From positions 124,001 to 188,000 of the forward strand of contig CDROCS010001802.1 in NCBI GenBank assembly GCA_977020255.1: 64,000 nucleotides of DNA, read 5' to 3'. This document shows positions 3,315 to 61,193 of this stretch, one piece after another; the first letter of the stretch is position 1, and every line of letters begins with the position of its first letter. The notes beneath the pieces are model-generated. The model was given only the letters and a program-made list of their open reading frames with translations. It was not told where the DNA came from and ran no database searches. Both the position numbers and the translations under genes were made by a program. The stretch is from Obrimoposthia wandeli. Its lineage: Eukaryota.

Positions 3315-3340
3315 AATTATCTCTTTTTATTTATAATAAT

Positions 3341-3368
3341 ATTGTATTTCATTTAATATTATTGTCAA
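3341..3368 (-). promoter_or_regulatory. sigma70-like promoter TTGACA-N16-TACAAT for the 874-aa paralog
   Basis: Reverse complement reads ttgaca ataatattaaatgaaa tacaat; same layout upstream of four other paralogs. Confidence 0.7.
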
Positions 3369-3489
3369 AGAGGCACAGAAAGAACAGTTAAATATTTAAT
3401 CACTTGTTAATTAAGGTAATGAATATTATTATTTTTTATTATTTATTTTTAAGCATAAAAAAGAATGAACAAATCATTCTTTTTTATAT

Positions 3490-5016
3490 TTATCTAAACA
3501 TCATTCTAGTTGTTTTGTAACTATAATTAAGGGTCGTATTATAACGCCAATTTATATTATATTGGACTGAGCCACTAGTATCTCCATCTATACTATCTAA
3601 ATATAACCCATTTAAATTGGATGTAAAACAACTTCCATGCCACCAAGCTCCGACTCCTAAAAGAGACGCACAATTAGAAGGATGTTCATCATTGTCAACA
3701 TCTTGTGTTGTGAACGGTTTACCAGAGTGATACGCCAAGCTATCACCTTGTGTTCCACTATGACCATCTACAGTTAATGTATATTTACTTGCTTCATTAG
3801 AAATGTTGAAAGTTGAATACCTTGCGTTATAAATAACTCCATTGTGATGACCGAGTTCTACATATAATTCTTTATTTCCGATTGTCATTTCTGCAATAGC
3901 TTCATTTCCTAACCAAAAATTATCTCCTGAACCAAAACCATTTTTATATTCAGACCAATTTTGGTTAAAATTGGAATTAGAAAATCGGCTTTGAAAAACA
4001 GTCCACCCTCCACCGTCAGTGGTCATATCACAAGTAGCACTTTTATTTCCAGAAGGTAAGTTTAATGTATAAATGCCAGAACCAGTGCTCCAACCATTAT
4101 CAAGAATAACTTTACAAGAAGTAGCTAATCCAGTACCAACATTATTTTGTGATTGATCATTTACTAATGTTTGAACTTCCACAATTGTTGTATTAACCGT
4201 TTCAGATGTGTCAGCCCATATATCGTATACTGTTTTAGTTCTATCTTGATCTTGAGAACAATCTCTATTTTGTACAAGAGGTTCATTTAATCTTAATGTG
4301 TTTGTAAGAGGAATCCAATCAGTACAGGAATGAATAGCGCCATTATTTAACCATTCAGTATATTCAGTTCTTTGTGAACCAGTAATGAAGTTTTTAGTGC
4401 CAACCGCTTCTTGATATTCTAATTCATTTAGATTTCGTTCTTCATTATTTGTAGAAAAAAGAGTTTCTGAGTTATCAGCCCATATATCATAAACCGTTTC
4501 AGTTCTTGTTTGTTTTTGAGAACAAGATCTATTTTGCGTAAACACTTCATTTAGATTTATAGTATTAATAAGTGGAGAAAAATCGCCACAAGCAAAATGA
4601 GAGCCATCATCTATCCAGTTAGTATATTCTGTACGTTTTACTTCGGTGTTATAATTTTCCAATCCAGTATCAATATATGAAATAATTACAGGTATATTTT
4701 GATAATCAGTTACAATGGTAGTTCTTGGTGTACCATTAAAAATTTCAGTTGTGGTAATTGTTCTTTCTTGTTTTTGTAAGCAGTTTTCATTTTGAGTAAA
4801 TGTTACTCCTAGAGGGAAATCATATTCATTAAACTCTTTTACACAATTAAATTCACTACCAATATCAGCCCAATTTGTCGTAATGGGAAGCGAATTTTCA
4901 ACAACATCGTAAACGTGTTTTTCTTGCGAAATAATACTAATATAGTCATTTGCTTGTGATGTTCCAAATAATATCGCTATTATTGAAGTAGTTAGTAATG
5001 TTTTTTTATAATTCAT
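3490..5016 (-). CDS. Secreted repeat protein with two 88-aa repeats and a complete fibrinogen C-terminal (FReD) domain
   Basis: Start re-set to MNYKK at 5016 by paralog alignment and RBS-like AAAAAGAG. FReD motifs GGGWTVFQSR, W-x-EYKNGFG, FWLGN, FTTQDVDND, GAWW, SNLNGLY. Confidence 0.9.
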   Translation of the reverse strand: MNYKKTLLTTSIIAILFGTSQANDYISIISQEKHVYDVVENSLPITTNWADIGSEFNCVKEFNEYDFPLGVTFTQNENCLQKQERTITTTEIFNGTPRTTIVTDYQNIPVIISYIDTGLENYNTEVKRTEYTNWIDDGSHFACGDFSPLINTINLNEVFTQNRSCSQKQTRTETVYDIWADNSETLFSTNNEERNLNELEYQEAVGTKNFITGSQRTEYTEWLNNGAIHSCTDWIPLTNTLRLNEPLVQNRDCSQDQDRTKTVYDIWADTSETVNTTIVEVQTLVNDQSQNNVGTGLATSCKVILDNGWSTGSGIYTLNLPSGNKSATCDMTTDGGGWTVFQSRFSNSNFNQNWSEYKNGFGSGDNFWLGNEAIAEMTIGNKELYVELGHHNGVIYNARYSTFNISNEASKYTLTVDGHSGTQGDSLAYHSGKPFTTQDVDNDEHPSNCASLLGVGAWWHGSCFTSNLNGLYLDSIDGDTSGSVQYNINWRYNTTLNYSYKTTRMMFR

Positions 5017-5042
5017 AATTATCTCTTTTTGTTTATAATAAT

Positions 5043-5070
5043 ATTGTATTTGATTTAAGAATATTGTCAA
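5043..5070 (-). promoter_or_regulatory. sigma70-like promoter TTGACA-N16-TACAAT
   Basis: ttgaca atattcttaaatcaaa tacaat on the minus strand. Confidence 0.7.
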
Positions 5071-5138
5071 AACACTATATTTTAAGAATAAAAAAGAGCG
5101 ATAGTTAATCACTCTTTATATTATTGATGAATTAATCT

Positions 5139-6398
5139 TTATCTAAACATCATTTTTACACTTTTATAACTATAAAGATGTCCATGTCCATGATACCAAT
5201 TAAGTCCGTTTTCGATACCAGAATAATTGCCATCTTTGTATATTCCGTTTAAATTAGAAAAATAACATCTATTATGCCACCAAGCCCCATTATAATTAAC
5301 AGCACAGTTAACAGATTCATGAAGATCATTATCAACATCTTTTGTCGTGAAAGCCATTCCTGAATGGTATGTTAAAGAATCACCATTGTTTCCACTAAAC
5401 CCAGAAACAGTTAACATATACTGACTTAATTCATTTCCGACATTAAAAGTATCATATTTGGCGTAATAGACAGTCCCATCGTGATGTCTAAAGTCTATAT
5501 ATAATTCTTTATTACCTACTGTCATTTCTGCAATTAAATCATTGCCAAGCCAAAAATTTCCTTCTGAGCCGAATCCGTTTTTGTATTCGATCCAGTTTTT
5601 ATAAAAATCTGTATCAGATACTCTACTTTGGAAAACAGTCCAACCACCACCATCAGTAGTCATATCACAAGTAACATCTTTGTTCCCAGAAGGAAGGTCT
5701 AATGTATAAACTCCATCTCCAGTGCTTAATCCATCATCCAATATATTTTTACAAGACAATCCTAATATAGAGGGTTTAGTTCCAATTGCAATTTGTGATT
5801 CGATTTCTATTAAAGTTTTAGTTTCTGTTTCGGTGCTGCTAATGGTTTCAGAATTGTCTGCCCATATATTGTATATATTTTTAATTCTATCTTGATTTTG
5901 AGAACAATTACGATTTTGGGTAAATGACTCTCCTAAATTAACGGTTGAAATTAATGGAGCAAAATTATTGCACGAATAATGAACTCCATTATCAATCCAA
6001 GCAGTATATTCAGTTCTTTCGACTCCAGTATTGAAATTTTCTTTGCCGACATCAATATAAGAGACAACGATATCCTTATTTTGATAATCAGTTACAACGG
6101 TAGTTCGAGGTGTACCATTAAAAACTTCAGTTGTTGTAATTGTCCTTTCTTGCTTTTGTAAACAATTTTCATTTTGAGTAAATTCTTCTCCTAAAGGATA
6201 GTTATATTCACTAAATTCTTTAATACAATTAAACTCGCTACCAACATCGATCCAATTTGTCGCAACGGGAATCGAATTTTCAACAACATCGTAAACGTGT
6301 TTTTCTTGAGAAATAATACTTATATAATCATTTGCTTGTGAATAACCAAATAATATGGCTATTATTGATGTGGTTAGTAATTTTTTTTTATAATTCAT
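5139..6398 (-). CDS. Secreted repeat protein with one 88-aa repeat and a complete FReD domain
   Basis: Same N-terminus; GGGWTVFQSR, WIEYKNGFG, FWLGN, FTTKDVDND, GAWWHNRCYFSNLNGIY. Confidence 0.9.
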   Translation of the reverse strand: MNYKKKLLTTSIIAILFGYSQANDYISIISQEKHVYDVVENSIPVATNWIDVGSEFNCIKEFSEYNYPLGEEFTQNENCLQKQERTITTTEVFNGTPRTTVVTDYQNKDIVVSYIDVGKENFNTGVERTEYTAWIDNGVHYSCNNFAPLISTVNLGESFTQNRNCSQNQDRIKNIYNIWADNSETISSTETETKTLIEIESQIAIGTKPSILGLSCKNILDDGLSTGDGVYTLDLPSGNKDVTCDMTTDGGGWTVFQSRVSDTDFYKNWIEYKNGFGSEGNFWLGNDLIAEMTVGNKELYIDFRHHDGTVYYAKYDTFNVGNELSQYMLTVSGFSGNNGDSLTYHSGMAFTTKDVDNDLHESVNCAVNYNGAWWHNRCYFSNLNGIYKDGNYSGIENGLNWYHGHGHLYSYKSVKMMFR

Positions 6399-6424
6399 AA
6401 TTGTCTCTTTTTATCTATAACATT

Positions 6425-6452
6425 ATTGTATTTTATTTAGTGATATTGTCAA
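6425..6452 (-). promoter_or_regulatory. sigma70-like promoter TTGACA-N16-TACAAT
   Basis: ttgaca atatcactaaataaaa tacaat on the minus strand. Confidence 0.7.
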
Positions 6453-6544
6453 AATAGTATTTTTATAAATATTTTTATAAATATTTTTTCAAATAAAAAA
6501 GAGCAATATATTATCACTCTTTTTATTATTTATAATTTTATTTT

Positions 6545-8575
6545 TTATCTAAACATATAGAATAATTTTGTACCATTGACCGTTGACTTATTTCTGTGCC
6601 AGCCGTTAAGGTGTGCATAAGCTCCAACTCCACGAGGGTCTATTTTAATAGACGTTATATATGCATTTTCAGAATATTGATGATATTCAGGTTTATTTAG
6701 AAGTCCACAGTTGTCAGTGCCTTCAGTTCCGCTACAATAAACTCTTGGGAAGTTCCCATTAAAATGTATACTTACAACAGTGTTATTCCAACCATTCATC
6801 ATTTCAACTTTTGTTTCGTTGATTAAGTCTATTGATTTATAAGTAATGCTTGAAGGATTTATGCTATCATCAGCTTGCATATTCATAATCCAATCTGTAT
6901 CTAATCCATTTTCTGACGATATGTTTTTTATATATGCCATATTAATCAAATCTTCCGCTGATAATATTTCGATGTCATATGAGCCATCATTAATATTAAC
7001 GAGATTATAAGTAGTATCAGTACCAAAAGTAGTCCAACCACCGCCATCAATCGTCATATTGCAAGATACATTATATGATTTGGTATTATTAATGATTTCA
7101 TAAACACCGTCACCATTACTTCCTGAATGATTTAGTATATCCAAACAAGATTCAGCCAAATAAGTACCAGTCGCAATTTGAGATTCATTTTCACTTACTA
7201 TTTGTGATTCTGAACTTGTTGAATTAATAGTTTCAGTTCCATCAGCCCATAAGTCAACAATAGTCATTGTTCTATTTTGGTTTTGTGAACAACTTCTATT
7301 TTGTGTAAAATCAGTTTCATTATATATTGTAGGAATAAGTGGAGCGAAAGTACCACAATCATAATGAGTCCCGTTATCTAACCACTCTGTATAATCCGTT
7401 CTTTGTTCGCCAGTTATAAAGTTCTTTGTCCCTGTTGAAATTTGTTCTTCATTCTCAATAAGTGTTTGCGTTTCTACATCGGTAGAAGATAGTGTTTCAG
7501 AATTATCAGCCCATATATCATATATGTTTTTAGTCCTATCTTGGTCTTGTGAGCAATCTCTATTTTGAGTAAATGAACTACCTAAATTAACAGTTGTCGT
7601 AAGTGGAATAAATGTATTACAACCGTAATGAGAGCCATTATCTAACCACTCTGTATACTCAGTTCTTTGAGTTCCAGTATTAAAGTTTTTAGTACCGATT
7701 GAATCTATTTCTTCATTTTCTATTAAAGTTTGTAATTCTATGTTTGTATTATTAAGCGTTTCAGAACCATCAGCCCATATATCATAAACTGTTTCTGTTC
7801 TGTTTTGATCCTGAGAACAATCTCTGTTCTGTTTGAATGTATCACCTAAATTAATAGTAGATTTTTCAGGTAAGAAGTTGCTACAAGAATATAATCCCCC
7901 ATTATTAATCCAGTTAGTATATTCAGTTCTTTGTACGCCAGTGTTGAAATTTAAAGTACCAATTGCAGGTTGTGACTCATTTTCATTTAATGTTCTAACT
8001 TCCGTATCTGTTGAATAGAATGTTTCAGAATTATCAGCCCATATATCATAAACAGTCTCAGTTCTTTTTTGATCCTGAGAACAATTCCTATTTTGTGTAA
8101 ATGATTCATCTAGATTGATTGTTGAAACAAGTGGGGAAAAATCACCACAAGCGTAGTGAGAACCATTATCTATCCAATTAGTATATTCTGTACGTTTTAC
8201 TTCAGTGTTATAATTTTCTAAACCAGTGTCTAAATATGAAACAACAACAGGTATGTTTTGATGATCAGTTACAACGGTAGTTCTTGGTATACCATTAAAA
8301 ACCTCAGTTGTTGTAACTGTTCTTTCTTGTTTTTGTAAACAGTTTTCATTTTGCATAAATGATTCGTTTAAAGGGTAATCATACGCATTAAACTCTTTAA
8401 CACAATTAAATTCATTTCCAATATCGATCCAGTTTGTAGCCACAGGAAGAGAATTTTCAACAACATCATAAACATGTTTTTCTTGCGAAATTATACTTAT
8501 ATAGTCATTAGCTTGCGCTGTTCCAAATAATATTGTTATTATTGATGTGGTTAGTAATGTTTTTTTATAATTCAT
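6545..8575 (-). CDS. Secreted repeat protein with four 88-aa repeats, fibrinogen-N-like module and a unique tip
   Basis: MNYKK start at 8575 (ORF track starts at 8581); SCLDIL...SCNMTIDGGGWT followed by sequence unrelated to the other tips. Confidence 0.85.
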   Translation of the reverse strand: MNYKKTLLTTSIITILFGTAQANDYISIISQEKHVYDVVENSLPVATNWIDIGNEFNCVKEFNAYDYPLNESFMQNENCLQKQERTVTTTEVFNGIPRTTVVTDHQNIPVVVSYLDTGLENYNTEVKRTEYTNWIDNGSHYACGDFSPLVSTINLDESFTQNRNCSQDQKRTETVYDIWADNSETFYSTDTEVRTLNENESQPAIGTLNFNTGVQRTEYTNWINNGGLYSCSNFLPEKSTINLGDTFKQNRDCSQDQNRTETVYDIWADGSETLNNTNIELQTLIENEEIDSIGTKNFNTGTQRTEYTEWLDNGSHYGCNTFIPLTTTVNLGSSFTQNRDCSQDQDRTKNIYDIWADNSETLSSTDVETQTLIENEEQISTGTKNFITGEQRTDYTEWLDNGTHYDCGTFAPLIPTIYNETDFTQNRSCSQNQNRTMTIVDLWADGTETINSTSSESQIVSENESQIATGTYLAESCLDILNHSGSNGDGVYEIINNTKSYNVSCNMTIDGGGWTTFGTDTTYNLVNINDGSYDIEILSAEDLINMAYIKNISSENGLDTDWIMNMQADDSINPSSITYKSIDLINETKVEMMNGWNNTVVSIHFNGNFPRVYCSGTEGTDNCGLLNKPEYHQYSENAYITSIKIDPRGVGAYAHLNGWHRNKSTVNGTKLFYMFR

Positions 8576-8600
8576 AATCATCTCTTTTGTTTATAATAAT

Positions 8601-8628
8601 ATTATATTTCATATAAAATAATTGTCAA
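8601..8628 (-). promoter_or_regulatory. sigma70-like promoter TTGACA-N16-TATAAT
   Basis: ttgaca attattttatatgaaa tataat on the minus strand. Confidence 0.7.
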
Positions 8629-8666
8629 AAATCAAATTATTTTAATCACTAAATAAATTATTATCA

Positions 8667-9896
8667 TTATCTTACCCAAAAGCTAAACTGGTTTGCTGTA
8701 CATTGTCTGCTACCATTGTGTGTATATGGATTTGTTACAATAGGACAAGTATCTGCTTCATACATCTTAAATTGCCCTAAACTCCACCACCAACTATTAG
8801 TTTGACTTCCATATTTTGCATGTCCATAACTATGCTGTACTAATCCAAAACCATTTAGGCTTTGTAATCCTGGTTCGGTTGTACTTAATATCTGAAAACC
8901 AGCAGGGACTGTAACTGAAGTATCCCCATTATTCGCAATAACTGAAGCATCTTGCTTAAAAATCGTATGGTTATATGTTGTAGTGGTTCTGTAATTTTTA
9001 TACATATATTGATTGTTGGTTTTTATATCATCGACTTTACCTAATATAGAATAAAGGTTACTGTTAGAATCTGGGTTAGATGCATTAAAATTTAGATTAT
9101 TAGATTCTGTAAACCAATGGTTTAATTTCTGACTCATTAATAATGTCCAACCACCACCATCTGTAATCATGTCGCAATACACATTTATATTATCACTTCC
9201 TGTTTGATTAATAGTGTAGTTACCACTCAATGTTTCACCACTGTTCAATAATGCTAAACATGAAGTCAAAACAAGAGTTCCTGTCGCATTTCGAGTTTCA
9301 TTTTCGTTTAAAACTGTTGTTTCTAAGTCACTAGAAAATAAGGTTTCTGTATTATTAGCCCATATATCATAAACAGTTTTTGTTCGTTCTTGATTTTGAG
9401 AACAATCTCTATTTTGTTCAAATGATTCGCCCAGATTAACAGTTGATACAAGTGGTGCAAATGTACCACAAGAATAATGAATACCTTCATTTAACCAAGT
9501 CGAATATTCAGTTCTTTGAGTGCCAGTCTTATAATTATCCAGACCAGTTTCTAAATATGAAATAACAACAGGAACATTTTGATTTTCAACTTTTACAGTT
9601 GTTCTTGGTGTACCATTAAAAACCTCAGTTGTTGTAACGGTTCTTTCTTGTTTCTGCAAACAATTTTCATTTTGAGTAAAAGACTGACCTAAAGGAAAAT
9701 CATAGGCACTAAACTCTTCAACACAGCTAAACTCTGTGCCTATATCAAGCCACTCTGTTGCTACAGGCAATGAGTTTTCAACGACATCATAGATATGTTT
9801 TTCTTGCGTAATGATACTAATATAATCATTTGCTTGAGTTGTTCCAAACAATATTGCTATGATTGATGTTGTTATTAACGTTTTTTTATAATTCAT
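8667..9896 (-). CDS. Secreted repeat protein with one 88-aa repeat, fibrinogen-N-like module and a unique tip
   Basis: Same signal peptide and N-domain; SCLALL...VYCDMITDGGGWTL...NLYSILGKVDDIK. Confidence 0.85.
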   Translation of the reverse strand: MNYKKTLITTSIIAILFGTTQANDYISIITQEKHIYDVVENSLPVATEWLDIGTEFSCVEEFSAYDFPLGQSFTQNENCLQKQERTVTTTEVFNGTPRTTVKVENQNVPVVISYLETGLDNYKTGTQRTEYSTWLNEGIHYSCGTFAPLVSTVNLGESFEQNRDCSQNQERTKTVYDIWANNTETLFSSDLETTVLNENETRNATGTLVLTSCLALLNSGETLSGNYTINQTGSDNINVYCDMITDGGGWTLLMSQKLNHWFTESNNLNFNASNPDSNSNLYSILGKVDDIKTNNQYMYKNYRTTTTYNHTIFKQDASVIANNGDTSVTVPAGFQILSTTEPGLQSLNGFGLVQHSYGHAKYGSQTNSWWWSLGQFKMYEADTCPIVTNPYTHNGSRQCTANQFSFWVR

Positions 9897-51979: not shown

Positions 51980-52320
51980 CTGATTGGTTGATGCGGAACT
52001 CAACTTTTCTGGACAAGGGTTCAAATCCCTTCAGCTCCACCAAAAGTACATTTAGTAAATCGAGTTACGATTACTAGTATGTTAGCGGTTAAGTGTATTT
52101 TTGATGGGGCTGTTCTGGAATCGACAGGATTGAGCGGTGATGTGGACAATTCAAGAGGAAATAACTCTTGTAAATAAAGTTAAAAAACGAATAATATCTA
52201 ACGATAATTCATTTGAAGGTGCTGCCTTAGCTGCGTAAGCCCTTCCGAGGTGTAAGAAGCCTTGTTACCAAATATCATAGGTTTTGCGAAAGGTTAGCTT
52301 GCTAATTAATCAATGAACCG
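51980..52320 (+). ncRNA. ssrA: Circularly permuted two-piece tmRNA: acceptor piece ~51980-52042, intervening segment 52043-52105, coding piece 52106-~52320; tag (A)SNDNSFEGAALAA at 52197-52238
   Basis: T-arm plus 3' end GGACAAGGGTTCAAATCCCTTCAGCTCCACCA lies upstream of the 5' end GGGGCTGTTCTGGAATCGAC. Acceptor stem GGGGCTG/CAGCTCC has G3:U70. The tag ORF ends LAA-stop. The intervening segment has complementary ends. Confidence 0.93.
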
Positions 52321-52326
52321 ACTTAG

Positions 52327-52348
52327 AACCACCTTCGGGTGGTTTTTT
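52327..52348 (+). terminator. Intrinsic terminator with a cUUCGg loop
   Basis: aaccacc-ttcg-ggtggtttttt. Confidence 0.9.
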
Positions 52349-52700: not shown

Positions 52701-54317
52701 TTAATTTTTATTTATATATATTTGACACAGATTGATAATAGTAATTTTTTCAGCATCGTCTAAATCAAAATTAGATAAAATAAGATCAATATTGTCTATA
52801 GCATCAAAGATAAAGTAATCTAAACCTCTTTCGCCTAAAATATCAACATTAAAACATTCAGTTCCTCCTCCACATTTTTTTAAGACTTTACTCATGTGTT
52901 TTTGATCTTTTTTATATTTTAACAAAACCCAATATTCAGCCAATCCAGAAATAATGTTGTTGACTTCTTTAATTTCATATTTTTTAATTACAACATTATC
53001 TTTTTCTAAATTATTTTTAGAAAACCGATAATTTATATTATGCTTTGTTAATCCTATTTTGTAAAAAGATTTCCCCTTGTATTTAAAATCTACATAGTAT
53101 AGGAATCTTTTATCTTCATAAAAAACTTTGTTATTAATTAACATTTTTAGATTTCTTGTGATACTAGAGCAAATAGGACAACCTGAACCATTTTTTAAAT
53201 TGAGGGCATCTGGAATCCAAGGCTTATTAAATAGTGCTCCATTGCCATGAATATGACAGGAAACATTACAAGATGTTTTTCTTAAATTAGTGTATTTACC
53301 TCTAAAACTCAAAAAATTATAATTATTCAATTTAGCTTGAATTAAGATTTCTTTAAGTGACTCTTTTTCATTTAATTCATAATTTCCAGAACATTTTGGG
53401 CATGTTGTACCTCGTGTTAAATTGTCAAAATCGGGTTGCCATTTATTATCCCATTTGTTACCTTCACCGTGAATATTACATTTTACAATACATCTGGTTC
53501 TTACATTTTTAAAATTATCATTTTTAAAGCCTAAGAATTCGATATTTGTGTTCTTTAGTTTTTCATTTAATCTTTTTATCGCATCTTCTTTTTTCAATAA
53601 AGAATAATGTGGCTGACCATTACAGTCAGGACATTTAAAACCAACAATAGAAAAAGAATTTATTCTCTTTATTTTTGGTATTTTCCATTGATCGCTTCTT
53701 CCATGTTTGCTACAGGTTACTATAATTTTTGTTTTATTGACATTCTCATAAAATCCCTTTTCAAAAGAATGAAACTTTATATTTGATGTTTCTCTTGTTC
53801 TTAATTTAAAATTTTCAAAAAATCTTTTTTCAGCTTTAGAAATTAATTTATTATTATTTTTAAAAGGAGATTTCTTTCTGTTTTTATGAGCACATTTGCT
53901 GCAACTTACACCTCTTGTTAACGTCTCGAAACTTGGGAAACTTGGGTTTTCAAAATCAGATAATTTTCCGTGGGTTTTGCATTCAATTAAACATTTAGTT
54001 TTTTTACCTTCATACTTCCCGTTTAAAAAACCTAAAAAGGTCAATCCCTCTTTTAATTTTTCTTTTAATACCATACCAGCTTCTTCTGTACTTGGTTTAT
54101 AATTTTTTTTACATTTTGGACAGCCAGATCCGTTAATTAAATTAGAATAAGTAGGAATCCACCTATTACCCCATTCAGCCCCATATCCGTGTATATCACA
54201 CATTACAAAGCATTTACCTTTTTGTGTTCTTAATTCACCATCAACGAATCCAAGAAATGATAATAAAGTGTTGGAAAACAATTTATTTATATTATTTATA
54301 TAACTTTGATTTTTAAT
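52701..54317 (-). CDS. Putative homing endonuclease: tandem Zn-ribbon (CxxHG...GCPxC, DUF723-like) repeats plus a C-terminal GIY-YIG/T5orf172-like domain
   Basis: Five C-x2-HG...C-P/S-x-C units; LYYV...YKIGLTK...RF...E...TECF. The ORF track starts at TTG 54281; the frame is open to an ATT at 54317 behind an AGGAG. Confidence 0.7.
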   Translation of the reverse strand: MKNQSYINNINKLFSNTLLSFLGFVDGELRTQKGKCFVMCDIHGYGAEWGNRWIPTYSNLINGSGCPKCKKNYKPSTEEAGMVLKEKLKEGLTFLGFLNGKYEGKKTKCLIECKTHGKLSDFENPSFPSFETLTRGVSCSKCAHKNRKKSPFKNNNKLISKAEKRFFENFKLRTRETSNIKFHSFEKGFYENVNKTKIIVTCSKHGRSDQWKIPKIKRINSFSIVGFKCPDCNGQPHYSLLKKEDAIKRLNEKLKNTNIEFLGFKNDNFKNVRTRCIVKCNIHGEGNKWDNKWQPDFDNLTRGTTCPKCSGNYELNEKESLKEILIQAKLNNYNFLSFRGKYTNLRKTSCNVSCHIHGNGALFNKPWIPDALNLKNGSGCPICSSITRNLKMLINNKVFYEDKRFLYYVDFKYKGKSFYKIGLTKHNINYRFSKNNLEKDNVVIKKYEIKEVNNIISGLAEYWVLLKYKKDQKHMSKVLKKCGGGTECFNVDILGERGLDYFIFDAIDNIDLILSNFDLDDAEKITIINLCQIYINKN

Positions 54318-54712: not shown

Positions 54713-55930
54713 TTATCTTAAATAAGGTTTAAGATCGACCTTAAAAATCTGAATGTAATTATTTACACTTCTATATATGTATAAATAATCATCTTTAAAA
54801 ATAAATCCATTTATACCAGTATTACAAGAAAAAATAGGGGAATTATTAATATATATAGCGGTCTTTTGTTTATTTTGTTGTGATTGGTTTATTGCTTTAT
54901 ACACATAAAGCCCTTTATATAGTTTTGCTTTCCCTCTTTTTGAAGTAAAACCGTCATAATTTCTATATTTCTCAATATATTTAAATTTTAACTTATTATT
55001 TTCTATATAATGTCTTACAAAAACGTTTCCATCAATATTATTTTTCAATAAATAATAGAAATTTTTATAACCAGCCTTTGTAGGACAATTATTTTCGGGA
55101 TACTTTTTACAGTAATAGTCTAAGTCGGAGATATGCAAGTTAGAATCATTAAACTTGGAATATGTTTGATTATTATTTCCTATATTAAGAAGTGGATGTG
55201 TATTGAATAAACTGCTTTCAAAAGTTAATCTGAATGTTTTGTGTTTGTCGAAATATTCTTTTCTATCTATTTTATTTTCTATGTAAGAAACTCCATTCAC
55301 AAAATTTAAACTTTCATCCAGCAAAGGAAGCCTAAAGTATTTTTTAAAATTAGCAACCTTAAGATTGTTTTTAACAATATTTATAGAATCGTCAATTTGA
55401 GAAATAATTTTACTATCTTCTGCGAGGAAGAAATCATTCTCGGTAACAGAAATATAATTGAATTCAAAGTTATATTTAATCCAAGAATTAAATTCTAAAA
55501 TCATTTTATGATCTTTAAATCTAAAAACTTTATTTGAATATAAAATCTTGCCATTATTTTTTGATTTAGAAGGGTTATAATAAATCATATAATATTTTTC
55601 TGATAATTTTATGATCACCGATTTTGGTGATATATATTCATTGAACTGTTTTTCTACATTTAAATGATTAAAAATATCATTATCCTTGATTTCAATTTCA
55701 CTAACTAATTTTATGTTTTCAAATAATTTATAATCATCTTTTTCAAATAAGTATTCTTTTTTCTTTTTTTCTAAATACTCTTGTAATAGTTTATCTTCTT
55801 CCCATTTGACTTTAAGATTTTTAAAATCTTCATTTTTCTTGACTTGTTCATTTTCAAAATATATATCTAATCCGAATACTGCTGTTGCAAGAAGTAAAAT
55901 GATTCCAAACATTTTTTTAAAAACATTCAT
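54713..55930 (-). CDS. Membrane-anchored hypothetical protein
   Basis: N-terminal hydrophobic helix; 405 aa. Confidence 0.7.
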   Translation of the reverse strand: MNVFKKMFGIILLLATAVFGLDIYFENEQVKKNEDFKNLKVKWEEDKLLQEYLEKKKKEYLFEKDDYKLFENIKLVSEIEIKDNDIFNHLNVEKQFNEYISPKSVIIKLSEKYYMIYYNPSKSKNNGKILYSNKVFRFKDHKMILEFNSWIKYNFEFNYISVTENDFFLAEDSKIISQIDDSINIVKNNLKVANFKKYFRLPLLDESLNFVNGVSYIENKIDRKEYFDKHKTFRLTFESSLFNTHPLLNIGNNNQTYSKFNDSNLHISDLDYYCKKYPENNCPTKAGYKNFYYLLKNNIDGNVFVRHYIENNKLKFKYIEKYRNYDGFTSKRGKAKLYKGLYVYKAINQSQQNKQKTAIYINNSPIFSCNTGINGFIFKDDYLYIYRSVNNYIQIFKVDLKPYLR

Positions 55931-55974: not shown

Positions 55975-56444
55975 TTACCTTTCAACAAGGCTTTCGTCAA
56001 TTGTTCTTCTTACGGGATTAAAGAAAAAGTTAATAATCCTTCTTGTGCCAGTTTTTGCTTCAACTACGACAGACATTCCTGAGTTTATATTTATAAAATT
56101 TCCATTAATATATAATTTAGTATCTTCTAATATAATTTAGTATCTTCTAATTTAATTTTGGCTTTAAATACAAGTCCTAATTTTCCATCTTGAATTGCAT
56201 CATTCGAAATATTTGTAATTTCTCCTTTTAGAGAACCATTTTTTATAAAATTAAAAGTATCAACCTTCACAGTCGTTTCTTGTCCGACACTTAGAAATCC
56301 AATATCTTTATTAAGTATCATTGCTTCAACAATAAGTTCATCATTTTCAGGAACAATTTTTAAAACGGGTTCTGTTGCATTTAGAGAACCACCTCTTGTG
56401 TGTATTGCTAAATCTTGCACGAAGCCATTGATTGGAGATCTTAT
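55975..56444 (-). pseudogene. hlyD: HlyD-family (type I secretion membrane-fusion protein) C-terminal remnant
   Basis: SPINGFVQDLAIHTRGG...KIVPENDELIVEAMILNKDIGF...KVDTFNF..NGSLKGEI, then SGMSVVVEAKTGTRRIINFFFNP in another frame. A 20-bp tandem duplication at 56112-56151 creates a stop; no N-terminal half. Confidence 0.85.
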
Positions 56445-56501
56445 TTAGTTAAAACATCTACAAAAATTAAAAATATCAATACAATAACATCTTTTAATTC
56501 A

Positions 56502-56530
56502 TTGACTGACAATATTTTATGTGTTATTAT
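56502..56530 (+). promoter_or_regulatory. sigma70-like promoter TTGACT-N17-TATTAT
   Basis: Sits upstream of the ORF-free structured region. Confidence 0.65.
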
Positions 56531-56536
56531 TTATTA

Positions 56537-57029
56537 TTCCATCAGTATTAAGTTTACTTGATTATCTGGTGGTAAGTTAAGAAGGTGAATCGTTAGGATT
56601 GAAAAATAACCACCTCTCCCGTTAGCTAAAAAAGCACTTTGAGCAGGTATAAAAGCTTGTAACATTGATGTATGCTAGTGTTAGCGTAAGTCGCTTGGTA
56701 ACTAGGAAATCCAGAATACTATTTAATTGTAAAGATTTCATTTCTTACGGTTAGATGAGAACGAAATAGGATCTTTGGTCGCTACAATTGAAAAATTGTT
56801 CCTCTTAGATCGCAAAGAATCATGAAAATGATTCTTTGTTTAAATTAATGTATCGTGGTGTCGGATGTGCTCCTCGTAGAATGAACAAGTATCTTTTGAA
56901 TGATTCGTGGTGTATAGTATGCTCCTCGTAGAATGAACAAGTAAAAACTTGGATAGGGGACAGGAACGGCTTCCTGCCTATTGACCCGTTAATTCGGTTA
57001 GCCGACAATAAGCACCTTCGGGTGCTTTT
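56537..57029 (+). ncRNA. Candidate large structured ncRNA (~490 nt), family unknown
   Basis: Promoter-terminator unit with no credible ORF and raised GC. Hairpins caaagaatcat-GAAA-atgattctttg (56813-56838), acaatt-GAAA-aattgt (56784-56799), caggaa-cggc-ttcctg (56961-56976); internal duplicated 39-nt motif. Confidence 0.7.
57010..57029 (+). terminator. Intrinsic terminator with a cUUCGg loop
   Basis: aagcacc-ttcg-ggtgctttt. Confidence 0.9.
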
Positions 57030-57046
57030 ATTTTTTCTAATAATTT

Positions 57047-57447
57047 TTAATTAAAAGCAATAAAATCTGTAATTATTTGTTGCTTTTCTTTTGCTTCCAA
57101 TTTATCAAGGTATCGAAGTTTTGCATTTTCTTTTCCTTGGATAACAGTAATTATATAATATTCAACGTCTAAATCTTTTCTTTTTTTAATGGGGTTTAAT
57201 ATTAATCCATTTTTATTAAAAACTTTGTCGTTAATAATTAAAGCATTTCCTTTAATTGAATATTCATTTTTGATGTTAGAGACATTCTTAATAATAATAT
57301 CTTTACAGACATTGTTATTGTGCGATTCTAATCTTTCTCCTTCTTTTCCACCATACCAAGCATTTTGTTCAAAAAAAGAATCAAAGTAATGCTCACATCT
57401 ATCAATATGTTGATTGTCTATTTCGGTTCGGCATTGTGAGAATTTAT
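57047..57447 (-). pseudogene. 3' part of the IS-interrupted lipoprotein gene
   Basis: Joined to 58904 it reads in frame ...KGS-H-KFSQCRTEIDNQ...QQIITDFIAFN-stop at 57047-57049. Confidence 0.85.
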
Positions 57448-58903
57448 CGACTCAAAAGCAAGAACACCCATTCCTTCAGGTATGGGATGAATTGCTAGTA
57501 AATTAGGCTAATTTATCTTTTTATTGATTTCTCAATGTTTTTGTTGACATTTCAATGGGAACCATTATTATTGTCAACATGATAACAATTAGAAATCTGG
57601 TCAAAACCAGTCATCACAACTATAAAAATATTAAACGTGCCTGTCGAAATACAAGTGCTATTTTTAATTGTGCTAATTATATTATGAGACAATCTTTTTT
57701 CGATGGTGATATGAGAAAATGGAATAGTGTTGATAAACAATTAAAAAACTTAAATCCCATATATCAAACTAACCCAAGTGCCGCTTCTCAAACAACAATA
57801 AAACGATTAGGTGAAGATTGGGAGTCTTTTAGAAAAGGGGTTGAAGATTTTAAAAACAATTCTTCAAAATACAAGAAAAGACCCAAGCCTCCTGCTTATT
57901 CTAAAAATTTAAAAACATACATTCAACCCGCTCAAGGCTTTAAAATACTTGACGGGTTTATTCACTTTCCAAAAATATTGGAACTTGAACCAATGAAAAT
58001 TTTTAATATAGAAGATAAAAAAAGTGGAAAAAACGGAAAAACAAGTGAGATTCGTTTTGTCCCTCACGGTCATTGTTTCTGGGTTGAAGTCATTTTCGAT
58101 GATGTCGAACAAGTAGAAAACAACCAGAAAGACATCAAATTAAACAAAGAAAACCATATTGCTATTGATTTAGGGATAGATAATCTTTTAACTATTATTT
58201 CAAATGTAGACACGGTAAAACCGATTCTCATTAAAGGAAGAATTATTAAATCTATAAATCAACAATACAATAAGAAAAAAGCTTTTTTTCAAAGCCAAAA
58301 TAACAAACCTATGGTAGATAAAATTGGGGTACAACGTTATCTTAAAATACAAGATTATATGCACAAATCATCCAATAAAGTAATTCAACATTGCTTGAAA
58401 AATGACATTGGGACAATTGTTATTGGTAAAAATGATAATTGGAAAGATGAAATAAATATTGGTCGAGTAAATAATCAAAAATTTGTAAGTATTCCGTTTC
58501 AAAGTCTTATTTCAAAAATAGAATATAAAGCCGAAAAAATAGGTATTAAAGTGATTATTCAAGAAGAGTCTTACACATCTAAAAGTGATGCATTAGCCCT
58601 TGATAATTTACCGAAATATAAAAAAGGCAACAAGAAAAAACACGTATTTTTGGGTAAAAGAAAAAAACGTGGTTTGTATCAATCTTCGATTGGAAAGTTG
58701 GTCAATGCGGATATTAATGGAGCGATTAATATCTTAAGAAAAGTAATTGGCGATGGTTTTGTAAAAAACCTAGTTAATAAGGGGTTAGTCTTCAACCCCG
58801 AAGTCATTGCGTTGCAATAACTTCGAGATGAAAACAGAAAATTTAGATTGTATCTCTATCTTTTTTGTTTCAAGCACCGTCCTTCAGGTCGGTTGTATTT
58901 GAC
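57448..58903 (+). mobile_element. Non-autonomous IS200/IS605-family (IS1341-like, tnpB-only) element, 1456 bp, inserted 3' of TTAT
   Basis: Subterminal hairpins cccat-t-cc-TTCA-gg-t-atggg (57467-57486) and accg-t-cc-TTCA-gg-t-cggt (58876-58893). Right end ...TGAC. No target duplication. Removal restores the host ORF. Confidence 0.88.
57555..58820 (+). CDS. tnpB: TnpB RNA-guided endonuclease (RuvC with relocated catalytic Glu)
   Basis: RuvC-I IAIDLGIDN; IVIGKNDNWK at the canonical RuvC-II site; QEESYTSK; RuvC-III NADINGAINI. The start may be the internal MITIRN. Confidence 0.92.
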   Translation: MGTIIIVNMITIRNLVKTSHHNYKNIKRACRNTSAIFNCANYIMRQSFFDGDMRKWNSVDKQLKNLNPIYQTNPSAASQTTIKRLGEDWESFRKGVEDFKNNSSKYKKRPKPPAYSKNLKTYIQPAQGFKILDGFIHFPKILELEPMKIFNIEDKKSGKNGKTSEIRFVPHGHCFWVEVIFDDVEQVENNQKDIKLNKENHIAIDLGIDNLLTIISNVDTVKPILIKGRIIKSINQQYNKKKAFFQSQNNKPMVDKIGVQRYLKIQDYMHKSSNKVIQHCLKNDIGTIVIGKNDNWKDEINIGRVNNQKFVSIPFQSLISKIEYKAEKIGIKVIIQEESYTSKSDALALDNLPKYKKGNKKKHVFLGKRKKRGLYQSSIGKLVNADINGAINILRKVIGDGFVKNLVNKGLVFNPEVIALQ

Positions 58904-58920
58904 GAGAACCTTTCAATTCT
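58740..58920 (+). ncRNA. Predicted omegaRNA (reRNA) scaffold ending at 58903 plus flanking guide gagaacctttcaattc
   Basis: Hairpin cgaagt-c-attgc-gtt-gcaat-a-acttcg, further stems and the RE hairpin. Position follows established TnpB biology; the 5' boundary is a guess. Confidence 0.6.
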
Positions 58921-59090
58921 TTATCATAAATATATTTTGAAGAACTATGTTTGAATGAAAGCAATTCGTTACAATCAATTTTTTCATTGGAAAGATCCAT
59001 AGCAATATAATCAGTACATCCTGATAATATAATTAGAATGAGTGGTGGTAATAATAATTTAATAATTTTACTCCTATTTTTTAATACCAA
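58904..59090 (-). pseudogene. 5' part of the IS-interrupted lipoprotein gene
   Basis: Lipobox ILSGC; the last six residues (RQIQPT) in the ORF track come from the IS. Confidence 0.85.
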
Positions 59091-59145: not shown

Positions 59146-59174
59146 TTGATTTAAAAAAATGATTGTGTTATAGT
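59146..59174 (+). promoter_or_regulatory. sigma70-like promoter TTGATT-N17-TATAGT with extended -10 TG
   Basis: Lies upstream of an ORF-free structured region. Confidence 0.65.
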
Positions 59175-59180
59175 ATGTTT

Positions 59181-59561
59181 TCAAAGGTTGGTTTGATTTT
59201 ATCCTTAATGGGATATTGAATTACTCTCCTTTAACTTATTCCCATCGCACTATGGTAAAGTGTGGTCAACCATGAGACATGATTGGTGACTTGGAGATGT
59301 CGTATCTAACCTGAATGTTACATTTTTGATAAAAATAAAAATGCGGAGTTTGTAAATACTTCGACAGAAAGAATATCAGAATTTATTTTAAAATGATAAT
59401 AACAGGTTTAGGGCTTATAATCCGAAAATGTCTGATTATTTAGATTTGAATTGGTTGAATAAGCCATTGACGATTTAAGGTTCGGTAGTATCTTACTACA
59501 AGTCTTTAACCAATACGACCGTGTTAAACGCTATTTAAAGCCACCTTCGGGTGGCTTTTTT
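59181..59561 (+). ncRNA. Candidate structured ncRNA (~380 nt), family unknown
   Basis: Promoter-terminator unit with no ORF of 60 aa or more. Hairpins cgcact/agtgtg, gtca..acca/tggtgac, gtagta-tct-tactac; 5'/3' pairing gttggtt/aaccaat. Confidence 0.55.
59537..59561 (+). terminator. Intrinsic terminator with a cUUCGg loop
   Basis: aaagccacc-ttcg-ggtggctttttt. Confidence 0.9.
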
Positions 59562-59774
59562 ACTTTCTTTTATTTTAATATGACGATAATTATTTATACT
59601 AACAAAAATAATTTAAAATCCCTTTCCACGCTGCGTTGGCTTTGCTATACTAAATGTTACTATGTCGGTTAAAACAACAGAATTGTGCTTTACTTCTTTT
59701 ATTAATAGGAATATAATAGAGTTTCAAACTAGCCTTTTGGCTTACTCTTATTTCTTTTTTTAAAGGTATTAAAC

Positions 59775-60604: not shown

Positions 60605-60703
60605 GTATAAGTCACCGAAAGGTGGCTTTTTTATTTAATTATTAAATATTTTTGTTTTTTTTAATATGAGGTATATAATAGATTAATTAATTAGGAGTTA
60701 TAT

Positions 60704-60943
60704 ATGGATTCATTTTTTCAAAGAAAGGAAGTAAAAGACGTATTGTTAAGTAGAGGAAAAGAATCGAGGAATATAGGTTCTTCGTTTTCAGCGGGAGATA
60801 AAAATGGACTTTTCACTAGAGAATATATTTCTTGGCAAGTTCGTAGTGCTCGGACAAAAGTTACAATGCACCTTAACGATGATGAGAGGGTTGCTTGGTT
60901 TAGAGATAATCCAGAACCACAAAACAAATATAAAAAAGTTTAA
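60704..60943 (+). CDS. Small hypothetical protein, tandem paralog 1
   Basis: MDSFFQRKEVKDVLLSRG... with an AGGAG RBS. Confidence 0.8.
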   Translation: MDSFFQRKEVKDVLLSRGKESRNIGSSFSAGDKNGLFTREYISWQVRSARTKVTMHLNDDERVAWFRDNPEPQNKYKKV

Positions 60944-60956
60944 TAGCGAGGTACTT

Positions 60957-61193
60957 ATGGATTCATTTTTTCAAAAAAAAGAAGTAAAAGACGTTTTGTT
61001 AAGTAGAGCAAAAAGTTCGAACAAAGTTGGATCATCCTTCTCAGGAAGCGATGAAAATGGAACGTTTACTAGGGAATACCTTTCTTGGCAACTTCATTGT
61101 GTTTGGGCAAAAGTTACAGTGCATCTTAACGATGAAGAAAGAGTAGCTTGGTTTGCAGAACATCCAGAGCCTCAAAACAAGTATGAAAAGTAG
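60957..61193 (+). CDS. Small hypothetical protein, tandem paralog 2
   Basis: Start re-set to ATG 60957 (GAGG RBS); MDSFFQKKEVKDVLLSRA... Confidence 0.8.
   Translation: MDSFFQKKEVKDVLLSRAKSSNKVGSSFSGSDENGTFTREYLSWQLHCVWAKVTVHLNDEERVAWFAEHPEPQNKYEK

What the first reader, a model, noticed from the sequence alone, without database searches (positions are those of the whole stretch)
56502..57029. About 490-nt highly structured ORF-free transcription unit: candidate new large ncRNA
It has its own promoter and cUUCGg terminator, and GC is clearly above the flanks. Many stems are present: aggtg/cacct enclosing aatc-gttag-gatt; aacatt/agtgtt; agcg/cgct; tatctgg/ccagaata closing a 5' domain; aaagat/atcttt; two GAAA-tetraloop hairpins (one of 11 perfect bp); and atagg..caggaa/ttcctg..cctat. 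It lacks the hallmark motifs of RNase P, group I/II introns, SRP and tmRNA. The size and context resemble large phage-associated RNAs of unknown function (ROOL/GOLLD class), but I cannot assign it to them.
Basis: partly seen in the sequence, partly recalled or inferred. Interest (0 to 1): 0.75.

Follow-up and report, generated by a model that had tools for sequence, protein, structure and literature searches.

The report
Orphan copy of toxin-linked small RNA
The ORF-free unit is real, but only its last ~65 nt has outside support: it is a toxin-less copy of an uncatalogued pseudoknotted small RNA that elsewhere sits just after MazF-like toxin genes on mobile elements and that several phages carry alone.

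Summary
They include a sigma-70-like promoter (56502-56530), a cUUCGg terminator (57010-57027), raised GC, no long ORF and the named stems. The fold of the whole ~490 nt is only modestly better than shuffles (z -2.3). No Rfam family matches.

No homologue of the left ~400 nt was found anywhere I could search. The right end (56946-57010) belongs to a conserved 65-nt RNA module with three helices and a loop-tail pseudoknot. On 16 distinct sequences, 98.7% of cells pair and 10 pairs change on both sides.

In Gammaproteobacteria this module is a ~100-nt promoter-to-terminator sRNA gene. It lies directly downstream of a ~330-aa MazF/PemK-fold "YifN-like" gene in all 9 protein lineages sampled, on ICEs, mobilisable islands and defence islands.

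Toxin-less copies occur in T4-like phage tRNA clusters, inside the intervening sequence of a jumbo-phage permuted tmRNA, after a phage gp32-like gene, and in this window.

My best reading, which is inferred, is an RNA antitoxin or partner of a MazF-like toxin (type III-like). Here it is an orphan copy at the 3' end of a longer lineage-specific transcript. It is not a ROOL/GOLLD-class large RNA.

The parts
56502..56530 (+). Sigma-70-like promoter (TTGACT, 17-nt spacer, TG, TATTAT). It predicts a transcription start near 56537-56540.
   Evidence: matches 10 of 12 positions and has an extended -10 TG. This is a consensus match only; transcription was not tested.
56538..56945 (+). Lineage-specific 5' extension (leader) of about 400 nt. 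It is ORF-free and moderately GC-enriched, with several local hairpins.
   Evidence: fold z-score -3.0 on the + strand against -1.4 on the - strand. No homologue was found. No YifN-like or other protein remnant was found.
56813..56838 (+). Perfect 11-bp hairpin with a GAAA loop, followed by GUUUAAAUU. It could be a weak internal terminator or a structural hairpin.
   Evidence: it appears in both the MFE and the centroid structure.
56847..56943 (+). Two tandem 45-nt direct repeats (56847-56891 and 56899-56943, period 52). They share an identical 23-nt core and differ in a 7-nt segment. They are not copies of the conserved module.
   Evidence: The core 18-mer has no real match in GTDB representative genomes or IMG/VR. 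Model R1 does not match here.
56946..57010 (+). The conserved 65-nt pseudoknotted RNA module. P1 is 56952-56957 paired with 56977-56982. The GGA bulge is 56958-56960. P2 is 56961-56966 paired with 56971-56976, with the CGGC loop at 56967-56970. The GAC linker is 56983-56985. P3 is 56986-56988 paired with 56995-56997. GCCG at 57001-57004 can pair with the CGGC loop.
   Evidence: 85% identity to T4-like phages, E 1e-9. Searches found further instances. Searches give the covariation; model R1 scores 84.6 bits and finds a single copy in the window; compensatory support for the pseudoknot.
57010..57037 (+). Intrinsic terminator (AAGCACC-UUCG-GGUGCUU plus a T-run), starting 6 nt after the module. 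The close spacing matches the phage gp32-type copies.
   Evidence: The CACCTTCGGGTG core occurs only 3 times in the window, all on the + strand downstream of the tmRNA gene.

Best explanation
Shown: positions 56946-57010 are one copy of a conserved, previously uncatalogued 65-nt RNA module. It has an outer helix P1, a bulge, an inner hairpin P2 with a CGGC loop, a GAC linker and a small hairpin P3. A following GCCG can pair back to the P2 loop to form a pseudoknot. An intrinsic terminator follows.

Shown: in Gammaproteobacteria (Enterobacter hormaechei, Edwardsiella ictaluri, Marinomonas, Xanthomonas, and many metagenomic contigs) the module is a self-contained ~100-nt sRNA gene. It has its own promoter and terminator and lies 30-90 nt after the stop codon of a ~330-aa protein. 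The central domain of that protein has the MazF/PemK endoribonuclease-toxin fold. The pair sits on ICEs, mobilisable islands and defence islands.

Inferred: the RNA is the direct partner of that toxin. Most likely it is a protein-binding RNA antitoxin, in the way ToxI neutralises ToxN in type III toxin-antitoxin systems. The invariant unpaired nucleotides would be the protein contact or a substrate mimic.

Inferred: the toxin-less copies in phages and in this window act as antitoxin mimics or anti-addiction decoys. The phage copies lie in T4-like tRNA clusters, in a jumbo-phage tmRNA intervening sequence, and downstream of a gp32-like gene.

In the window no good promoter lies directly before the module. 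It is probably made as the 3' end of a ~490-nt transcript started at 56502-56530. The first ~400 nt of that transcript are specific to this lineage and of unknown role.
For: Module and structure:
- It is 85% identical over 61 nt to an unannotated spacer in T4-like phages.
- Exact-pattern scans recovered independent instances.
- On 16 distinct sequences, 98.7% of cells pair, 10 of 15 nested pairs change on both sides, and slid controls pair at 19-46%.
- The Xanthomonas variant replaces the CGGC/GCCG pairing by GCAGCA/UGCUGC at the same places, with 0 of 2000 shuffles matching.

Linkage to the toxin gene:
- All loci fetched by protein identity alone carry the module downstream on the same strand. 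That covers 9 protein lineages, 100% down to ~31% identity to P0001 (the L036 protein).
- A TTGACA-17-TAnnnT promoter begins at or just after the stop codon.

Toxin identity:
- PF02452 PemK_toxin hits and NCBI names support it.
- The AlphaFold model has pLDDT 91, and its top Foldseek hits are MazF toxins with TM 0.70-0.80.

Other points:
- No conserved protein antitoxin neighbour is seen.
- The sRNA has no better-than-chance antisense match to the toxin mRNA 5' region, with z from -1.2 to +2.7. This favours protein binding.
- Solo copies exist in phages and in a jumbo-phage permuted tmRNA intervening sequence.
- The window copy scores as high as any other (84.6 bits).
- The window has no YifN-like gene or remnant.
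Against: - No experiment links the RNA and the protein. Conserved adjacency could reflect shared descent of one mobile module.
- The layout differs from every known type III system. This RNA is single-copy and downstream of the toxin, not tandem repeats upstream of it. The toxin is MazF-like, not ToxN/CptN/TenpN.
- The YifN-like protein has an extra N-terminal beta domain that could itself be an inhibitor.
- One bacterial copy (L023) also lacks the toxin and lies next to PD-T7-5.
- Many members were found with a pattern that fixes P2, so the census is biased.
- Transcription of the window unit is untested, and the role of its 5' 400 nt is unexplained.
Confidence: 0.5

Rival explanations
1. One reading: the whole ~490 nt is one large structured non-coding RNA with a function of its own. 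The conserved module would be just one of its domains.
For: There is a single good promoter at 56502-56530 and a single strong terminator. GC is raised over the whole unit. The 5' part folds better on the + strand than on the - strand, z -3.0 against -1.4. One other instance, L024, also has a ~300-nt ORF-free stretch before the module.
Against: No homologue of the 5' 400 nt was found in any collection or fetched locus. It shows no similarity to the L024 leader or to the phage upstream module. The overall z-score is only -2.3. In at least 9 lineages the module works as a ~100-nt gene without any such extension. No Rfam large-RNA model matches.
Confidence: 0.15
2. The module is a small self-cleaving ribozyme or RNA-processing signal. 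It would be used to cut multi-RNA precursors or to define 3' ends.
For: It is compact and pseudoknotted, with about 25 invariant nucleotides. It occurs between tRNAs. It also occurs between the two halves of a permuted tmRNA, where cleavage is required, and just before terminators after a phage gene. Known small ribozymes have a similar phage-associated, context-free distribution (own knowledge).
Against: No known ribozyme model matches even at E<=10. In bacteria the module begins a few nucleotides after its own predicted start site, where cleavage would serve no clear purpose. The tight linkage to one protein family is not expected of a ribozyme.
Confidence: 0.1
3. The module is a trans-acting base-pairing sRNA, or a binder of a general host factor such as a tRNA/tmRNA-processing or translation component. 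On this view it is unrelated to the neighbouring toxin gene.
For: It has the promoter, structured 5' domain, A/U-rich spacer and terminator layout typical of sRNAs. Its sequence is extremely constant across phages of enterics, marine Gammaproteobacteria and this AT-rich bacterium, which suggests a universal target. It is associated with tRNA and tmRNA genes in phages.
Against: The conserved nucleotides lie mostly in helices or the pseudoknot, not in an open seed. It is adjacent to YifN-like genes in 9 of 9 lineages. It is absent from 5,426 complete E. coli genomes and 72,556 plasmids, so it is not a housekeeping RNA.
Confidence: 0.15
4. The window copy is a functionless relic. It would be a fragment of a phage or mobile element left in a decaying tmRNA-adjacent island, with chance promoter-like and hairpin features upstream.
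For: The neighbourhood is degraded. There is a HlyD C-terminal fragment, a gene apparently split by a tnpB-only insertion, and no partner toxin. Promoter-like sites are frequent in this AT-rich DNA.
Against: The module keeps every invariant position and has its own compensated P1 (GAUAGG/CCUAUU), scoring 84.6 bits. Its GC is 49% in a 28% GC genome, which argues for selection or very recent arrival. It retains an intact terminator.
Confidence: 0.1

Closest known systems
Type III toxin-antitoxin systems (ToxIN, CptIN, TenpIN) and the phage PhiTE pseudo-ToxI mimic (own knowledge: Fineran 2009; Blower 2011, 2012)
   Same: A small pseudoknotted RNA is encoded next to an endoribonuclease-type toxin gene on mobile or defence DNA, with a promoter and an intrinsic terminator. 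No protein antitoxin is evident. Phages carry toxin-less copies of the RNA, as PhiTE does with pseudo-ToxI.
   Different: The RNA here is a single copy placed downstream of the toxin gene, not 2-5.5 tandem repeats upstream of it. The partner protein is a ~330-aa MazF/PemK-fold protein with extra N-terminal and coiled-coil domains, not ToxN/AbiQ/CptN/TenpN. Neither RNA-protein binding nor toxicity has been tested.
MazEF/PemIK type II toxin-antitoxin systems
   Same: The partner protein's central domain is a confident MazF fold. It is annotated as a PemK/MazF family toxin.
   Different: No MazE/PemI-like antitoxin gene is conserved next to it. The protein is three times longer than MazF. A conserved structured sRNA gene occupies the neighbouring position.
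pemK RNA motif of Rfam (own knowledge: a Firmicutes RNA motif found near pemK genes)
   Same: It is a structured RNA associated with PemK-family toxin genes.
   Different: No Rfam 15 model, that one included, matches any instance, even at E<=1 to 10. The phyla and the architecture differ.
ROOL, GOLLD and other large phage-associated ncRNAs
   Same: An ORF-free, GC-enriched unit with links to phages and to tRNA/tmRNA neighbourhoods.
   Different: No match to their covariance models. The conserved core is 65 nt, not 400-800 nt. The long 5' part is not conserved anywhere I could search.

Membership tests
ROOL / GOLLD / OLE / raiA / HEARO large ncRNAs (Rfam) | A match to the family covariance model (sequence plus structure). 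| tested here: not met
   cmscan of the whole window at gathering thresholds finds only tmRNA_permuted at 51982-52238. cmscan of 56300-57200 at E<=10 gives only terminator-like chance hits.
RNase P RNA, SRP RNA, tmRNA, group I/II introns, tRNA | A match to the Rfam models or to ARAGORN. | tested here: not met
   The only tmRNA is 4.7 kb upstream.
Type III antitoxin RNA (ToxI/CptI/TenpI) | Tandem direct repeats of ~34-48 nt that make up the antitoxin, lying between a promoter and a terminator upstream of the toxin gene. | tested here: not met
   The conserved module is single-copy in every locus and lies downstream of the toxin gene. The window's two 45-nt repeats are unrelated to the module and have no toxin gene after them.
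Type III antitoxin RNA (ToxI/CptI/TenpI) | A partner toxin of the ToxN/AbiQ, CptN or TenpN families. | tested here: not met
   The partner matches PF02452 PemK_toxin and MazF structures, and no ToxN-family Pfam hit was seen. The window has no partner at all.
Type III antitoxin RNA (ToxI/CptI/TenpI) | The RNA folds as a pseudoknot and binds and inhibits the toxin protein directly. | not testable with these tools
   The pseudoknot is supported by a compensatory variant. An antisense mechanism is not supported. Binding and inhibition need experiments.
The YifN-associated sRNA module defined here (model R1) | P1, P2 and P3 helices plus the invariant GGAACGGCU, GAC and GCCG positions. | tested here: met
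   Window 56946-57010 scores 84.6 bits, E 6e-21, over the full model length. The window sequence is part of the seed alignment. Independent support is its 85% identity to the phage copies and the pair counts.
The YifN-associated sRNA module defined here (model R1) | A position 30-90 nt downstream of a YifN-like MazF-fold gene on the same strand. | tested here: not met
   tblastn and a family HMM against all six frames of the window find nothing. The window copy is therefore a solo copy, like the phage copies and L023.
The YifN-associated sRNA module defined here (model R1) | Its own sigma-70 promoter ending about 7-10 nt before P1, and an intrinsic terminator after the module. | tested here: inconclusive
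   The terminator is present. No promoter passing the scan lies directly upstream. There is only a TAGAAT box at 56929-56934 with a poor -35 (my reading). The nearest good promoter is at 56502-56530.

The most novel reading that the evidence does not exclude
A new type III-like toxin-antitoxin or defence family in which a long MazF-fold toxin is held in check by a single pseudoknotted ~100-nt sRNA encoded just downstream. Phages have repeatedly captured that RNA as an anti-defence decoy. T4-like phages carry it in tRNA clusters, a jumbo phage carries it inside its own permuted tmRNA gene, and others carry it after gene 32. The window's 490-nt transcript would be a long-form, chromosomally kept decoy in an otherwise unsampled AT-rich bacterium.
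Probability: 0.35. Interest if true: 0.8.

Novelty: new variant of a known kind. Interest (0 to 1): 0.62.

Why it matters
If the RNA really neutralises the MazF-like protein, it would link the MazF superfamily to RNA antitoxins. That would be a fourth, architecturally different type III-like family. It would also be a second natural case of phages stealing an antitoxin RNA.

It would explain conserved but unannotated spacers in T4-like tRNA clusters. It would also explain an odd passenger inside a phage tmRNA gene.

Even without the mechanism, the module is a well-supported structured RNA family that is missing from Rfam 15.

The 490-nt size is not.

Tried and rejected
Searches for a known identity of the region:
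- Rfam at gathering and permissive thresholds, on the region and on other instances, found nothing.
- ARAGORN found nothing.
- No second copy of the region exists in the window.

Searches for homologues of the 5' part and repeats:
- The 23-nt repeat core is absent from IMG/VR.
- Its 18-mer gave three hits in GTDB genomes. nhmmer found no similarity to the region in any of them, so I treat them as chance. That spent the only genome-contig scan.
- BLAST of the region against plasmids gave nothing.
- Against phages, only the 61-nt module and the terminator matched.

Attempts to widen the family:
- Generalised module patterns added only chance coding hits (L010, L011, L038, L039), plus one real new member, L040.

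Specific ideas tested and dropped:
- Homology does not extend upstream into the T4-like 120-nt module; the alignment score equals the shuffle mean.
- T4 itself, including rnaC and rnaD, lacks the module.
- The 3' end is not a duplicated tmRNA 3' end; similarity is limited to the terminator.
- Protein remnants in the 5' part were not found.
- Homologues of the flanking genes, sought in order to fetch syntenic loci, do not exist in the protein collection searched (about 5.8 billion non-redundant sequences). Exact look-ups are not on record either.
- A link to the nearby TnpB is rejected. The tnpB element looks like a separate insertion in a - strand gene, and other instances of the module have no TnpB.
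- An antisense (type I-like) action on the toxin mRNA has no signal.
- E. coli complete genomes and plasmids contain no copy.
- Literature searches for the sequence, YifN, pemK RNA and permuted tmRNA in phages found no description of this module.

Full report
**1. The observation.**

The window is AT-rich bacterial DNA with 28% GC and no N runs. Between a HlyD-family C-terminal fragment on the - strand (56127-56420, PF13437) and a start-less - strand ORF (57050-57451) lies about 630 nt with no ORF over 62 aa.

The consensus scan finds TTGACT-17-TATTAT with an upstream TG at 56502-56530. It also finds a 7-bp UUCG terminator with a T-run at 57010-57027 on the + strand. GC is 0.33-0.40 inside the unit against 0.20-0.28 outside it.

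The thermodynamic signal is modest:
- z is -2.3 for the 500 nt.
- z is -3.0 for the 5' 311 nt on the + strand, against -1.4 on the - strand.

Promoter-like sites are common in this AT-rich stretch, with 33 found against 23 expected. So the features are real, but "highly structured 490-nt RNA" is not established by them alone.

**2. No known family.**

Rfam 15 at curated thresholds finds only a permuted tmRNA at 51982-52238. A permissive scan of 56300-57200 gives only terminator-like chance hits. ARAGORN finds nothing.

**3. What is conserved.**

BLAST of the region against 50,697 phage records matched only two pieces. One is the terminator. The other is 61 nt (56945-57005) at 85% identity, E 1e-9, to an unannotated spacer in the tRNA clusters of three T4-like phages: STP4-a, CkP1 and SEA1.

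A 19-nt core of this piece was then found in several other places:
- IMG/VR phage contigs, just after a gp32-like gene and before a terminator.
- Metagenomic bacterial contigs, including two copies on one 842-kb contig.
- A phage-like contig, L024.

A degenerate pattern then found the module in a 363-kb jumbo-phage contig. There it fills the intervening sequence of a permuted tmRNA gene, between the CCA end of the acceptor piece and the GGGG start of the coding piece.

The other 18 metagenome loci (19 hits, one of them at E 0.08 to the nhmmer query) and several pattern hits lie in high-GC or evidently coding sequence and show no significant match to the rest of the module, so I treat them as chance.

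**4. Structure of the module.**

The parts, with window coordinates, are:
- P1, a 6-bp outer helix: 56952-56957 with 56977-56982.
- A 3-nt bulge.
- P2, a 6-bp hairpin with a CGGC loop: 56961-56976.
- A GAC linker.
- P3, a 3-bp hairpin.
- GCCG, three nucleotides further on.

On nine hand-picked sequences all 171 cells pair, and 8 pairs change on both sides.

On 16 distinct sequences aligned to model R1:
- 98.7% of cells pair.
- 10 of 15 nested pairs change on both sides.
- Partners slid by 1-3 columns pair at only 19-46%.

The loop-tail pairing CGGC/GCCG never varies in these sequences. In the Xanthomonas variant it is replaced by GCAGCA/UGCUGC at the equivalent places, with 0 of 2000 shuffles matching. 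I take this as compensatory support for a pseudoknot.

The window holds exactly one copy, scoring 84.6 bits.

Two caveats apply. Many members were retrieved with a pattern that fixes P2, and alignment A3 is fitted to the model.

**5. Genomic partner.**

In two bacterial loci the gene just upstream is a ~330-aa protein of no Pfam family at default thresholds. The word search found 43 relatives. Some are named by NCBI or JGI as PemK/MazF family toxin or YifN.

I fetched loci by protein identity only, with no use of the RNA sequence. Every lineage carried the module 30-90 nt after the stop codon on the same strand:
- Three lineages at 61-80% identity (P0002, P0003, P0007; nine loci, L043-L051).
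- Enterobacter hormaechei, Edwardsiella ictaluri and Marinomonas at ~35-42% identity, and Xanthomonas at ~31% with a divergent form.

In each locus a TTGACA-17-TAnnnT promoter starts at or just after the stop codon. An A-rich spacer and an intrinsic terminator follow the module. It is therefore an independent ~100-nt sRNA gene.

The protein's central domain is a MazF fold:
- PF02452 is detected in 7 of the 8 members scanned, and is above the curated cut-off in two.
- The AlphaFold model has pLDDT 91.
- The top 50 Foldseek PDB hits are all MazF-family toxins (MazF, MoxT, YdcE and similar mRNA interferases); the top 30 have target-normalised TM 0.65-0.80, with the best alignments at 0.70-0.80.

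The neighbours are CBASS genes, tra genes of ICEs, and integrase, relaxase and MobC genes. One solo bacterial copy lies between an integrase-like gene and PD-T7-5. No protein antitoxin gene is conserved beside the toxin.

A family HMM finds no YifN-like gene or remnant in the window. It finds none in the phage loci, L023, L024 or L040 either.

**6. Mechanism.**

Shown: there is a covarying pseudoknotted RNA. It is invariably adjacent to a MazF-fold gene in mobile DNA. Toxin-less copies exist in phages and in this window.

Inferred: the RNA is the toxin's antitoxin or regulator and acts by binding the protein, as ToxI does with ToxN (own knowledge). Three observations favour protein binding:
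- About 25 nucleotides are invariant across hosts as different as enteric phages and this bacterium.
- No protein antitoxin is present.
- The sRNA has no better-than-chance complementarity to the toxin mRNA 5' region.

Phage copies would then be antitoxin mimics, like pseudo-ToxI of PhiTE (own knowledge). Their placement among tRNAs, or inside a tmRNA precursor, would let tRNA-processing enzymes release them.

The window copy would be an orphan (anti-addiction or decoy) copy, or a recent arrival. Its short 6-nt distance to the terminator resembles the phage gp32-type copies rather than the toxin-linked bacterial ones.

I put about 0.5 on this reading. The rivals are a true large RNA, a ribozyme or processing signal, a general trans-acting sRNA, and a relic. 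They are set out separately.

**7. The 5' 400 nt.**

Nothing related was found:
- Not in phages or plasmids.
- Not in IMG/VR or GTDB genomes for the repeat core.
- Not in any fetched locus.
- Not in the phage module upstream of the T4-like copies.

It contains two 45-nt tandem repeats with an identical 23-nt core and an 11-bp GAAA hairpin. No promoter passing the scan lies directly before the module. The module is therefore probably transcribed from 56502-56530 as the tail of a longer RNA. Whether that extension matters cannot be decided here.

The flanking proteins have no relatives at all in the protein collection searched, about 5.8 billion non-redundant sequences. Syntenic loci could therefore not be fetched.

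**8. Context.**

The unit lies 4.7 kb downstream of the permuted tmRNA gene, in what looks like a decaying island. A tnpB-only insertion (57555-58820; PF01385 and PF07282) appears to split a - strand lipoprotein-like gene (58884-59090 and 57050-57451).

The terminator core CACCTTCGGGTG occurs only three times in 64 kb. All three are on the + strand, at the ends of the tmRNA gene, of this unit, and of a second ORF-free unit.

**9. Comparison and novelty.**

The module works most like a type III antitoxin, but it fails that family's defining layout and toxin type. It matches no Rfam family, the pemK motif included. I found no description of it in the literature I could search.

I rate it a new variant of a known kind. 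Interest is 0.62.

**10. Limits.**

- Public collections could be searched only by exact patterns or by BLAST of three curated sets.
- The family census is incomplete and biased.

Noticed in passing
window 51982-52348 (+): A permuted (two-piece) tmRNA gene, scoring 95.2 bits to RF04321. It has its own promoter-like site and a CACCTTCGGGTG terminator at 52326-52348. ARAGORN missed it, and the alpha, beta and cyano tmRNA models did not reach threshold.
   Followed up: partly
window 59146-59562 (+): A second ORF-free promoter-to-terminator unit of about 380 nt (TTGATT-17-TATAGT with TG; terminator at 59537-59558). It folds better than the finding itself, with z -4.0 and 0 of 100 shuffles as good. 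It has no Rfam match, and only its terminator hits phages. It is a candidate ncRNA in its own right.
   Followed up: partly
window 52330, 57013, 59542 (+): The 12-mer CACCTTCGGGTG occurs only three times in 64 kb. All three are on the + strand within 7.3 kb downstream of the tmRNA gene, and each ends an RNA-like unit. This could reflect tandem islands integrated at the tmRNA 3' end, or a shared terminator type. Similarity does not extend beyond about 26 nt.
   Followed up: partly
window 57555-58820 (+), with 57050-57451 (-) and 58884-59090 (-): A tnpB-only IS200/IS605-type element (421-aa TnpB; OrfB_IS605 plus Cas12f1-like TNB domains). It appears to be inserted in a - strand lipoprotein-like gene, whose signal-peptide N-terminus and start-less C-terminus lie on either side of it.
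   Followed up: partly
window 56127-56420 (-): An isolated C-terminal fragment (97 aa) of a HlyD-family membrane-fusion protein. No N-terminal part is present upstream.
   Followed up: no
L005 2393-2511 and L004 2393-2511; core at L005 2424-2456: A separate unannotated ~120-nt segment follows tRNA-Gln in T4-like phages. Its 33-nt core is 97% identical in many Vi01-like (Ackermannviridae) phages of Salmonella and Klebsiella. This is another conserved phage non-coding element with no Rfam match.
   Followed up: partly
L040 10349-10757 (-): A 363-kb jumbo-phage contig encodes a permuted tmRNA (tag AANDAFFEETRLAA). Its intervening sequence consists almost entirely of the conserved module.
   Followed up: yes
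L043-L050; L023 2611-3639: YifN-like gene plus sRNA pairs sit beside CBASS genes (CD-NTase, Cap15). A solo sRNA copy sits beside a PD-T7-5 defence gene (E 1e-116). This is a defence-island context.
   Followed up: partly
window 54713-55930 (-) and 57050-57451 (-): Both flanking proteins have no relative in the protein collection searched (about 5.8 billion non-redundant sequences). Many other window ORFs have no Pfam or NCBIfam match. The source lineage seems essentially unsampled.
   Followed up: partly
window 60687-61189 (+): A 250-nt tandem duplication at 78% identity. It overlaps the ORF at 60804-61193.
   Followed up: no
window 690-9896 (-): A run of four large genes, each carrying a fibrinogen-like GGGWT_bact domain.
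   Followed up: no
window 52701-54281 (-): A 526-aa protein containing a CapR homology domain and a DUF723 region, and built of repeated Cys-rich segments.
   Followed up: no
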